DNA from: Octopus bimaculoides
Lineage: Eukaryota
Length of the DNA stretch: 51,551 nucleotides
Direction: 5' to 3'
NCBI RefSeq assembly: GCF_001194135.2
Contig: NC_068985.1
Location: 70,894,269 to 70,945,819, forward strand
Each line of letters starts with the position of its first letter. Within the stretch, counting starts at the first letter, position 1. This document shows positions 1,584 through 2,145 of this stretch, in pieces. The translations under genes and the position numbers were made by a program. The notes beneath the pieces were generated by a model, which saw nothing but the letters and a program-made list of their open reading frames with translations, was not told where the DNA came from and did no database searches.

Positions 1584-2145
1584 TTGAGTTTATGAGAGAG
1601 CAGTGCATGTCATCAAAGTGACACTGGGGTAAAATATACGAAGCCCAGTATACCCACCATGACTACCTGTCTGATAAGGGTACACCAGACACATGCATCT
1701 CAACCATATGTGCGCGACATGTTGATCTCATATCAAGATTAATAGCGCATGACCTTGCAGGTGGAACCCAGTCAGAATTTTATTCAGGTCGAGTAGCCCA
1801 TCTGCTCATAAGGTCCCTGAATAAGGGTTGTTTAAGGATGTTGAACGTAACACCCATATTTTCAGAGGTGAATTATCAAACCCCAAAGAATTCTTCTCAA
1901 CCATTGGTTATGATGCTCCTCAACTACTTCTACTCGTGATCAGTGATGCACATATCGTTAGCCACTAAGGGACATGCTCAACTGGTTAAGGTCAAGCCAC
2001 TGACAAGTAAATCTGTGGCATTCAGTAGAATATTTGCTGTAGCCCATCTTTTATACCAAAACAAAACAATGTACATGATAATCTTCCCAATCAATTAAGA
2101 TGAGACTCCAGGAGAACCACTGCCTGGTACTGCATCAGGGCATTT
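1584..2145 (-). mobile_element. ~560-bp non-coding interspersed element, copy 1 (full length)
   Basis: Colinear along its whole length with 12921-13483 and partly with 17454-17850 and 31887-32052. Flanked by ATT/TTG and TAA/TTA tracts. Orientation inferred from the truncation pattern. Confidence 0.85.

What the first reader, a model, noticed from the sequence alone, without database searches (positions are those of the whole stretch)
1584..2145. ~560-bp non-coding, (TAA)n-associated retroposon without a tRNA head: candidate non-autonomous partner of R4/Dong
Seen: four copies (1584-2145, 12921-13483, 17454-17850, 31887-32052), all on the same strand. All keep the same end (minus strand ..CTC(T)CACTCAA, running into TAA/CAA-type repeats in copies 1 and 3). 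The two short copies lose sequence only from the other end, and that end abuts (TTA)n in every copy. There are no TIRs, no LTRs, no recognisable ORF and no tRNA A/B-box head like the other SINEs here. Established: one-ended truncation is the signature of target-primed reverse transcription; Dong (R4 clade) targets (TAA)n; short internally deleted passengers (SIDEs) are known for R2. Inference: a Dong-mobilised, microsatellite-specific non-coding RNA element. I do not know whether it is already catalogued as an unclassified repeat.
Basis: partly seen in the sequence, partly recalled or inferred. Interest (0 to 1): 0.75.

Follow-up and report, generated by a model that had tools for sequence, protein, structure and literature searches.

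The report
Non-coding retroposon nested in TAA repeats
A roughly 560-base non-coding mobile element sits four times in this window, always inside TAA-type microsatellites and always in the same direction as neighbouring Dong-like jumping genes, so it is most likely a passenger copied by their enzyme; this is a plausible but fairly ordinary kind of genomic parasite.

Summary
There are four same-strand copies, at 1584-2145, 12921-13483, 17454-17849 and 31887-32052, and they are 76-84% identical. All four keep the end ..CTCACTCAA (minus strand). The two short copies lack only the other end, and that end abuts (TTA)n in every copy. I found no ORF, TIR, LTR, tRNA or Rfam match.

The window holds at least seven fragments of restriction-like-endonuclease (R2-superclade) LINEs. 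All are on the minus strand, and five of them keep their 3' end. Those ends run into (AAC)n(AAT)n or (TAA)n, and the 5'-truncated ends abut TAA arrays. c3, LINE A, c2 and LINE D form one head-to-tail train. Relatives of these LINEs in other genomes also end in (TAA)n. In one other genome they form identical same-strand trains, which is Dong-like behaviour.

The element shares no detectable sequence with any LINE here. The only shared features are the terminal ACT(C/G)AAT plus tail and a possible 5' CCTG-N8-CCAGG motif. No ribozyme was found.

Verdict: probably a trans-mobilised, (TAA)n-targeted, headless retroposon. It is a new member of a known kind and of moderate interest.

The parts
1584..2145 (-). 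Copy c1, full length (562 bp). Minus-strand 5' end is AAATGCCCTGATGC.. and 3' end is ..CTCTCATAAACTCAA.
1529..1583 (-). 3' tail or target array of c1. It reads AAT(AAC)5(AAT)2GATATT(AAT)9 on the minus strand and abuts the 3' end (..CCAATAAAGA) of a + strand SINE-like element.
2146..2182 (-). Array upstream of c1's 5' end. On the minus strand it is (TAA)6 followed by an inverted (TTA)-type stretch. A + strand SINE head lies 11 bp further on.
12921..13483 (-). Copy c2, full length (563 bp), 84% identical to c1.
13484..13561 (-). Array (AAC)6 AGC (AAT)19 on the minus strand. It is both the 3' tail of LINE A and the upstream flank of c2.
17454..17849 (-). Copy c3, 5'-truncated (lacks about 105 nt of the minus-strand 5' end) and with four internal deletions.
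17308..17453 (-). Compound array (AAT)4(GAT)7(AAT)~20(GTA)18 on the minus strand. It is the tail of c3 and the upstream flank of LINE A.
17850..17870 (-). (TAA)-type 21-bp array at the 5' truncation point of c3.
31887..32052 (-). Copy c4, 5'-truncated to the last 166 nt.
31864..31886 (-). Decayed AAN-triplet tail of c4 (AAAACGATAATAGTAACATCATT on the minus strand).
32053..32172 (-). 120-bp (TAA)n-type array at the 5' truncation point of c4. It is followed directly by a + strand SINE head.
13562..17307 (-). LINE A, a near full-length (3.75 kb) degenerate RLE-type LINE. It has an RT domain (RVT_1), a CCHC motif, a PD..D..K-like motif and the C-terminal motif ..IPIIVG..LLGTAHILRK. Its 3' end is ..AAGACTACTGAAT.
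12615..12920 (-). LINE D, a 5'-truncated C-terminal fragment (..ILKYEDLAIE..VVIGTLGT..LLGTARILRRALGI*) plus 3' UTR. It begins no more than 16 nt after c2's 3' end. Its (TAA)3TAG tail is at 12603-12614.
18972..20116 (-). LINE B, 5'-truncated (aligns to P0001 aa 404-757, 41% identity, tblastn E=3e-81). Its 5' junction is flush with the array 20118-20243. Its own tail, (AAT)29, is at 18885-18971.
20244..20513 (-). LINE A', a 270-bp 3' fragment of the LINE A family (83% identical). Its tail, (AAC)n(AAT)n, is at 20118-20243.
249..690 (-). LINE C, a 5'-truncated fragment covering the RLE domain and C-terminus. Its tail TAATAATAG(CAA)n..TAA (207-248) is joined directly to the 3' end of a + strand SINE (1-206).
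2123..2139 (-). CCTG-N8-CCAGG motif 6 nt from c1's minus-strand 5' end. c2 has CCTG-N8-CTAGG at 13460-13476. The only other match in the window is at 17291-17307, the extreme 5' end of LINE A.

Best explanation
The element is a roughly 560-nt, non-coding, promoter-head-less non-LTR retroposon whose sense strand is the window's minus strand. Its RNA is copied into (TAA)n microsatellites by target-primed reverse transcription, using in trans the protein of the Dong-like, restriction-like-endonuclease LINEs that occupy the same arrays.

Proposed steps (inferred): the LINE endonuclease nicks the (TAA)n/(TTA)n duplex in one fixed orientation. The RNA 3' end (..CACUCAAU followed by AAC/AAU repeats) is positioned on the nick. 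cDNA synthesis runs towards the 5' end and sometimes aborts, which gives c3 and c4. The 5' junction is then resolved inside the same array. Each insertion brings a new TAA-type tail, so further elements land next to it and head-to-tail trains build up. The (TTA)n tails of + strand SINEs supply some of the initial targets.

Shown: the anatomy, the shared strand, the shared tail type, the one-ended truncation, the trains, and the (TAA)n habit of the LINE lineage in other genomes. Inferred: reverse transcription itself, mobilisation in trans, and which LINE family is the partner. The source of the transcript is unknown. Read-through co-transcription is most likely, because no internal Pol III signal was seen.
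For: (1) There are four copies with one invariant end and one variable end, and an array sits at every variable end.
(2) c1 and c2 end at the same nucleotide on the other side, so 560 nt is a discrete unit.
(3) At least seven LINE fragments lie on the same (minus) strand. They have an RT domain, and they carry a CCHC motif plus PD..D..K and lack an APE domain, as their intact homologues do. The best solved-structure matches are R2 proteins at E=3e-29, against L1 ORF2p at 1e-13.
(4) Five LINE fragments keep their 3' end followed by (AAC)n(AAT)n or (TAA)n. The 5'-truncated ends of LINE B and LINE C abut arrays. This is the same signature as c3 and c4.
(5) c1's tail, AAT(AAC)5(AAT)n, has the same composite order as the tails of LINE A and A', and the termini are alike: ACTCAAT versus ACTGAAT.
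(6) There is a continuous minus-strand train: LINE A', LINE B, an assembly gap, c3, LINE A, c2, LINE D, spanning 20513 to 12603.
(7) All perfect ATT arrays are on one strand, 634 bp against 0 bp.
(8) Three homologous LINEs from other genomes end in (TAA)3-5 some 70-110 nt after the stop codon. In the genome with the closest relatives there are 11 LINE fragments, all on the same strand, with variable 5' truncation, each followed by (TAA)n. That genome shows 32 TAA arrays against 1 TTA array.
(9) Literature: Dong targets (TAA)n, including in a snail (PMC3812793). Bombyx Dong is preceded by (TAA)n in the sense orientation (PMC3774820). Dong-R4 is the most abundant recently active LINE group in Octopus vulgaris (PMC13282606).
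(10) CCTG-N8-CCAGG occurs only at the 5' termini of c1 and LINE A in the whole window, against an expectation of 0.11.
Against: The element has no detectable similarity to any LINE fragment in the window. Local alignment scores equal the shuffled null, and the nhmmer profile finds nothing else. It is therefore neither a SIDE-type deletion derivative nor a tail-sharing SINE of the four LINE families visible here.

Only two truncated copies define the polarity.

No HDV-like ribozyme was found by Rfam or by my own descriptor, which did not exceed its null. The same searches also found none at the LINE A 5' end, so this negative has low power.

Predicted RNA structure is not better than shuffles, and the 3' end shows essentially no covariation.

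The + strand of the element is the A-rich one, whereas the LINE is A-rich on its sense strand.

The + strand SINEs also carry (TTA)n tails, so the arrays alone do not fix the orientation.

The 5' motif was noticed post hoc.

The LINE clade (R4/Dong versus HERO or NeSL) was not tested.
Confidence: 0.6

Rival explanations
1. The element is + strand sense. On this reading it is a SINE-like retroposon with an (ATT)n 3' tail, mobilised by the same (probably RTE-type) machinery as the + strand tRNA-derived SINEs. The two short copies would have lost their 3' parts later, through microsatellite-mediated deletion or internal priming.
For: Seven of eight SINE copies are on the + strand and end in short (TTA)n tails. 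The element's + strand is A-rich. RTE 3' UTRs are microsatellites in octopus and in other animals (PMC9115989, PMC2887409).
Against: This requires 3' truncation in two of two short copies, with an array exactly at each break, and TPRT does not produce that. The right end has no similarity to the SINE 3' end. The (GTT)5 block lies next to the element's left end, as it does for the minus-strand LINE tails. The element is interleaved with minus-strand LINEs in one train.
Confidence: 0.12
2. The copies are 5'-truncated 3' portions (a long 3' UTR) of an autonomous LINE family whose coding part does not happen to lie in this window. On this reading they are not an independent non-autonomous element.
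For: All LINE families here have different 3' UTRs, so an unseen fifth family is possible. Octopus vulgaris has several Dong-R4 families (PMC13282606).
Against: c1 and c2 stop at the same nucleotide and are preceded there by arrays. The 3' UTRs of LINEs A-D and of their relatives are only about 70-145 nt long. No coding remnant is present in any frame.
Confidence: 0.1
3. The copies are retropseudogenes of a cellular RNA of about 560 nt (an lncRNA or mRNA fragment) that the (TAA)n-specific LINE machinery picked up occasionally. On this reading it is not a self-propagating family.
For: The ends are discrete, there is no promoter head, and there is no LINE-derived sequence.
Against: Four copies in 51 kb with 16-24% mutual divergence suggest repeated activity over time. 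The most conserved block lies at the 3' end, as expected for a recognition element. No RNA family matches.
Confidence: 0.1
4. The element is not a retroposon. It would then be either a microsatellite-targeting DNA element (Helitron-like MINE-1 or Micron-type MITE) or DNA-level duplication by unequal exchange between TAA arrays.
For: Microsatellite-targeting DNA transposons exist (PMC3812793). Arrays flank every copy.
Against: There are no TIRs or subterminal repeats. Neither strand has 5'-TC or 3'-CTRR termini (sequence). The flanks beyond the arrays are unrelated. The one-ended truncation and the tail composition match the neighbouring LINEs.
Confidence: 0.05

Closest known systems
SIDEs (short internally deleted elements) of R2 in Drosophila (Eickbush & Eickbush 2012; summarised in PMC3774820)
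   Same: Both are short, non-coding and lack a Pol III head. Both insert at the same specific target and in the same orientation as an RLE-type LINE, and are presumably copied by its protein.
   Different: SIDEs keep the partner's 5' ribozyme and its 3' UTR sequence. This element shares no detectable sequence with the LINEs seen here beyond 7 terminal nt, the tail and a 9-nt 5' motif, and no ribozyme was found. Its target is a microsatellite, not rDNA.
Dong (R4 clade) LINEs of Bombyx, Anopheles and Biomphalaria, specific for (TAA)n (PMC3812793, PMC3774820)
   Same: The (TAA)n target is read in the sense orientation on both sides. The neighbouring LINEs here have the RLE architecture and the same habit.
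   Different: Dong is autonomous, about 4-5 kb long, and carries a 5' HDV-like ribozyme. This element is 560 nt and non-coding. The R4 clade membership of the LINEs here was not tested.
Classical tRNA-, 5S- or 7SL-derived SINEs with LINE-derived tails (PMC3747384, PMC5786205)
   Same: Similar size, non-coding, dependent on a LINE, 5'-truncated copies, and a microsatellite-like tail.
   Different: No RNA-gene head or A/B boxes were found, and no tail region is shared with a LINE. Insertion appears to be target-specific.
RTE-derived microsatellite-associated repeat families of Lepidoptera (PMC2887409)
   Same: These are repeated sequences flanking microsatellites, explained by non-LTR retrotransposition with repeat tails.
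   Different: They are 3' fragments of the RTE LINE itself, with an array on one side only. Here the unit is not LINE-derived and arrays lie on both sides.
Microsatellite-targeting DNA elements (MINE-1 Helitron-like, Micron MITE; PMC3812793)
   Same: They are found inside microsatellites.
   Different: There are no Helitron termini and no TIRs. The one-ended truncation with an added tail points to reverse transcription.

Membership tests
SINE (sensu stricto) | 5' head derived from tRNA, 5S, 7SL or snRNA with an internal Pol III promoter | tested here: not met
   ARAGORN found 0 genes. Rfam gave nothing at the gathering threshold or at E<=10. No B box within 2 mismatches and no A box at a conserved position was found, but this scan has low power because the diverged SINE copies also fail it. 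T4+ runs occur on both strands.
SINE (sensu stricto) | 3' region shared with the partner LINE | tested here: not met
   Local alignment to the LINE A ends equals the shuffled null. The nhmmer profile finds no LINE fragment. Only ACT(C/G)AAT and the (AAC)n(AAT)n tail are shared. LINE families outside the window could not be tested.
SINE / non-autonomous non-LTR retroposon (broad sense) | Short, non-coding, invariant 3' end with a repeat tail, 5'-truncated copies | tested here: met
   Only four copies are available, two of them truncated.
SIDE-type derivative of an RLE LINE | Same target site and orientation as the partner LINE | tested here: met
   All 4 copies and all 7 or more LINE fragments are on the minus strand in TAA-type arrays and are interleaved in one train.
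SIDE-type derivative of an RLE LINE | 5' self-cleaving HDV-like ribozyme inherited from the partner | tested here: inconclusive
   There is no Rfam HDV-type hit. My own double-pseudoknot descriptor found nothing conserved between c1 and c2, and its null rate is high. The LINE A 5' end also gave nothing. A shared CCTG-N8-CCAGG motif is the only 5' resemblance.
SIDE-type derivative of an RLE LINE | 3' UTR identity to the partner | tested here: not met
   for LINE families A-D in the window.
Dong / R4 clade (applied to the neighbouring LINEs) | Restriction-like endonuclease (CCHC plus PD..D/ExK) downstream of the RT, and no APE domain | tested here: met
   The motifs are visible in LINEs A, B and C and in the intact homologues P0001 and P0002. 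Pfam finds RVT_1 and zf-RVT only. R2 proteins are the best solved-structure matches.
Dong / R4 clade (applied to the neighbouring LINEs) | Sense-strand (TAA)n at the 3' end and at 5' junctions | tested here: met
   In the window. In other genomes.
Dong / R4 clade (applied to the neighbouring LINEs) | RT phylogeny places the element inside R4 rather than HERO, NeSL or R2 | not tested
   No reference R4, HERO or NeSL sequences were available in the tools. HERO also contains microsatellite-specific families (PMC4640811).
Helitron-like (MINE-1) | 5'-TC and 3'-CTRR termini with a subterminal hairpin, inserted between A and T | tested here: not met
   The termini are TTGAGTGAG.. and ..GGGCATTT on the + strand, and AAATGCCC.. 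and ..CACTCAA on the minus strand.
MITE (Micron-type) | Terminal or subterminal inverted repeats and a fixed TSD | tested here: not met
   The inverted-repeat search finds only internal 10-14-nt pairs.

The most novel reading that the evidence does not exclude
The element is a true parasite of microsatellite-specific Dong-type LINEs that keeps none of the partner's sequence except two very short terminal signals: a 5' CCUG-N8-CCAGG hairpin and a 3' ACUSAAU plus AAC/AAU repeats. If so, it would define the minimal cis-requirements for Dong-type retrotransposition. It would also show that (TAA)n arrays act as self-extending landing pads, built jointly by SINE tails, LINEs and their passengers. 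An unrelated ~270-bp (TAA)n-tailed family beside the related LINEs in another genome (L004/L005) hints that such passengers arise repeatedly.
Probability: 0.2. Interest if true: 0.55.

Novelty: new member of a known kind. Interest (0 to 1): 0.38.

Why it matters
If confirmed genome-wide, this would be a documented non-autonomous partner of a microsatellite-specific (Dong-like) LINE, a counterpart of the R2 SIDEs at a non-rDNA target.

Three consequences follow. It would help explain why TAA microsatellites in this genome are strongly strand-polarised and packed with same-orientation elements. It would improve repeat annotation, because such units are usually filed as 'unknown' or as microsatellite flanks. 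It would also offer a small natural substrate for asking what RNA features an RLE-type LINE protein needs in cis.

It does not challenge current models of retrotransposition.

Tried and rejected
- **More copies of the element.** A protein search with the longest stop-free frame gave no candidates. Exact-pattern scans gave 0 hits in metagenome contigs (two scans), genome contigs and viral contigs. Exact-ORF look-ups for two window ORFs were not on record. A full-text literature search for DNA strings of the element and the SINE gave 0 papers. The nhmmer profile gave 0 hits on the five fetched loci from other genomes.
- **Small-RNA head.** Rfam and ARAGORN were negative.
- **HDV-like ribozyme.** Rfam and my own descriptor were negative, with low power.
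- **Conserved RNA structure.** The 3' end showed a covariation term of about 0. The 5' end gave z-scores of +1.1 and -0.9.
- **Internal dimer or duplication.** Rejected.
- **TIR or LTR.** Rejected.
- **Derivation from LINE A by internal deletion.** Rejected.
- **SINE heads beside c1 and c4 as a composite unit.** I considered this. SINEs also land in these arrays, so finding both SINE-flanked arrays among the element's 4 of about 11 arrays has p of about 0.1. I did not pursue it.
- **Order of (ATT)n then (GTT)n as an orientation marker.** This is only partly valid. One such compound array (723-816) precedes a 5'-truncated + strand SINE.

Full report
**Observation.**
The reported repeat is real and the coordinates are exact. 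blastn of 1501-2250 against the window returns three further matches on the same strand. A MAFFT alignment and an nhmmer profile built from the copies find four copies and nothing else. The E-values are 4e-199 (c2), 7e-199 (c1), 5e-127 (c3) and 3e-50 (c4), and the next hit is at E=0.68.

The shared left end TTGAG(T)GAG starts at 1584, 12921, 17454 and 31887. c1 and c2 also share the right end ..CTGCATCAGGGCA(A)TTT. c3 ends at ..GAATATTTGCTGT and c4 at ..CACGTGGGGC, and all four right ends are followed at once by ATT/TTA arrays of 37, 57, 21 and 120 bp. c3 also has four internal deletions. Gap-free identity between copies is 76-84%.

Perfect (ATT)>=5 tracts cover 634 bp of 51551, so this association is not chance. 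Not a single (AAT)>=5 tract lies on the + strand.

There are no terminal inverted or direct repeats and no internal dimer. No frame is open in both c1 and c2. There is no tRNA and no Rfam family, even at E<=10.

**The orientation problem.**
The window is eukaryotic and carries eight copies of a tRNA-like SINE, seven of them on the + strand, with short (TTA)n tails in their sense orientation. From memory, this SINE looks like the abundant Octopus SINE. I could not verify the organism.

The arrays alone therefore allow two readings. The first is a + strand element with a SINE-like (ATT)n tail, which would make the short copies 3'-truncated.

**What decides it.**
Translating the minus strand between c2 and c3 revealed a degenerate 3.75-kb LINE at 13562-17307, here called LINE A. 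It has RT motifs (Pfam RVT_1, E=1e-7). After the RT it has a CCHC motif and a PD..D..K-like motif, and it ends in the C-terminal motif ..IPIIVG..LLGTAHILRK.

Intact homologues (P0001, P0002) have this same RT-CCHC-RLE architecture and no APE domain. Their best solved-structure matches are R2 proteins at E=3e-29, against L1 ORF2p at 1e-13.

tblastn with these proteins then showed at least seven such LINE fragments in the window, all on the minus strand:

| Fragment | Coordinates | Notes |
|---|---|---|
| LINE C | 249-690 | |
| LINE D | 12615-12920 | |
| LINE A | 13562-17307 | near full length |
| LINE B | 18972-20116 | |
| LINE A' | 20244-20513 | |
| unnamed | 20660-21772 | lacks its 3' end |
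| unnamed | 28694-28976 | internal piece only |

Five of the seven keep their 3' end, and each of those ends runs into a TAA-type tail in its own sense orientation:
- LINE A has (AAC)6AGC(AAT)19.
- LINE A' has (AAC)n(AAT)n.
- LINE B has (AAT)29.
- LINE C has TAATAATAG(CAA)n..TAA, joined directly to the 3' end of a + strand SINE.
- LINE D has (TAA)3.

The 5'-truncated end of LINE B is flush with the array 20118-20243. That of LINE C lies next to the array 723-816.

This is the same signature that c1-c4 show if they are read on the minus strand. c1's tail, AAT(AAC)5(AAT)n, has the same composite order as the tails of LINE A and A'. The termini also resemble each other: ACTCAAT in the element and ACTGAAT in the LINE.

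The elements are also interleaved. Reading the minus strand from 20513 down to 12603, the order is LINE A', array, LINE B, (AAT)29, an assembly gap, (TAA)6, c3, array, LINE A, array, c2, no more than 16 nt, LINE D, (TAA)3.

I therefore accept the minus-strand reading. The + strand reading would need two independent 3' truncations with an array at each break, and it explains none of this context.

**Is the LINE lineage really (TAA)n-specific?**
Three homologues fetched from other genomes end in (ATA)5, (AAT)3 and (TAA)5, some 70-110 nt after the stop codon.

The closest relatives of LINE B are P0122 and P0123, at 64-65% amino-acid identity. Both come from one other assembly. Its two loci, L004 and L005, hold 11 LINE fragments, all on one strand. 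They are truncated at eleven different 5' positions, and eight of them can be read through to the ORF end, which is followed by a 3' stretch and then (TAA)n (six UTRs of 82-145 nt, two of 544 and 699 nt). Across these loci there are 32 (TAA)>=4 arrays against one (TTA) array.

This is the behaviour described for Dong, which targets (TAA)n in silkworm, mosquito and a snail (PMC3812793) and is preceded by (TAA)n in its sense orientation (PMC3774820). If the host is an octopus, Dong-R4 is also its most abundant recently active LINE group (PMC13282606).

Clade membership was not tested phylogenetically. HERO also contains microsatellite-specific families (PMC4640811), so I call the LINEs 'Dong-like'.

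**What is not supported.**
The element is not visibly derived from these LINEs. Local alignments to the 5' 700 nt, the 3' 500 nt and the whole of LINE A score no better than shuffles, and the profile search hits no LINE fragment. The 3' UTRs of LINEs A-D are also unlike one another, so an unseen partner family, or recognition through the tail alone, remains possible.

SIDEs of R2 and Dong itself carry a 5' HDV-like ribozyme (PMC3774820). Rfam finds none in c1 or c2. My own double-pseudoknot descriptor finds nothing conserved between c1 and c2 and has a high null rate. Neither method finds one at the 5' end of LINE A either, so this negative is weak.

RNA folding of the two ends gives no significant structure or covariation.

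One lead remains. The pattern CCTG-N8-CCAGG occurs only twice in the window, against 0.11 expected, and 1 of 100 shuffles reaches two. One match is 6 nt from c1's minus-strand 5' end. The other is at the very first bases of LINE A. c2 has CCTG-N8-CTAGG at the same place. I noticed this post hoc and treat it as a hypothesis only.

**Mechanism.**
The most likely account (confidence about 0.6) has four steps:
- A minus-strand RNA of about 560 nt, probably made by read-through transcription, because no Pol III head is present and T4 runs occur on both strands (low power).
- Recognition by the protein of a Dong-like RLE LINE.
- Target-primed reverse transcription at a nick in (TAA)n.
- Occasional abortive synthesis, which gives c3 and c4, with 5' joining inside the same array.

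New tails then extend the landing pad, which produces the trains. SINE (TTA)n tails provide some of the initial targets, as seen where LINE C sits in a SINE tail and c1 sits in the tail of a + strand SINE-like end.

The anatomy is shown. Reverse transcription, trans-mobilisation and the identity of the partner are inferred.

**Limits.**
The case rests on four copies in one window. No genome-wide census was possible because the public collections searched hold no match. I cannot say whether the family is already in a repeat library. It would most likely be filed there as 'unknown' or 'unclassified SINE'.

**Verdict.**
This is a new member of a known kind: a non-autonomous passenger of a site-specific LINE. 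It has two mildly unusual traits, namely a microsatellite target and no partner-derived sequence. Interest is 0.38.

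Noticed in passing
window 12603-20513 (minus strand): There is a 7.9-kb head-to-tail train of six retroelements (LINE A', LINE B, c3, LINE A, c2, LINE D), all on the minus strand and separated only by TAA-type arrays. An assembly gap (18101-18872) lies inside it.
   Followed up: yes
window, whole: The ATT/TAA microsatellites are completely strand-polarised: 634 bp of perfect (ATT)>=5 on the + strand and 0 bp of (AAT)>=5. 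Seven of eight SINE copies are on the + strand, and all RLE-LINE fragments are on the minus strand.
   Followed up: partly
window 1-206, 2190-2400, 5556-5722, 6663-6908(-), 10661-10746, 29944-30123, 32172-32367, 49452-49550, and 817-1000: These are copies of a tRNA-like SINE (AAGGCGGCGAGCTGGCAGAA..) with short (TTA)n tails. Two full-length heads (2194 and 32173) lie directly beside the arrays upstream of c1 and c4. A second 3'-end type, ..GGCC(C)TGT(T)GGCCAATAAAGA + (ATT)n, occurs at 1500-1528 and 8030-8057.
   Followed up: partly
window 2146-2182: The array upstream of c1 is a palindromic microsatellite: GTAATAGTAATAATAATAA followed by TTATTATTATTATTATTA. A strand switch of this kind is not explained by simple insertion into (TAA)n. 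It might be a snap-back or template-switch scar.
   Followed up: no
window 12905-12923: c2's 3' end is separated by no more than 16 nt from the first recognisable codons of the 5'-truncated LINE D (..ILKYEDL..). This could reflect insertion into a very short remaining tail, or an RT template jump that made a chimeric insertion.
   Followed up: no
L004 3435-3702, L004 ~5940-6235, L005 ~7129-7701, L004 6345-6963 (inverted): In the other genome that carries the closest LINE relatives, an unrelated ~270-bp non-coding repeat ends in ..CAGTTGTGTTTTCTT + (TAA)n and sits between TAA arrays inside the LINE trains. It may be an analogous passenger family. One copy is inverted.
   Followed up: partly
window 50414-50517 and 50637-50740: This is a 104-bp direct duplicate at 100% identity on either side of an N run (50518-50636). 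It is probably an assembly artefact around a gap.
   Followed up: no
window 8964-9645, 10452-10479, 18101-18872, 40825-41026, 41819-42152, 50518-50636, 51221-51230: These are runs of N (assembly gaps, 2147 bp in all). They explain the low-GC bins and the long spurious ORFs at 8537-9790 and 18050-18986.
   Followed up: yes
window 48855-48997 and 49219-49431: These are long (AAG)48 and degenerate (ATC)71 trinucleotide arrays, unrelated to the TAA system.
   Followed up: no
window 8058-8145, 11828-11882, 32368-32432: These three long (ATT)n arrays have right-hand neighbours that match neither the element nor a LINE. They could be the 3' ends of further unrecognised minus-strand passengers, or the bare tails of + strand elements.
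   Followed up: no
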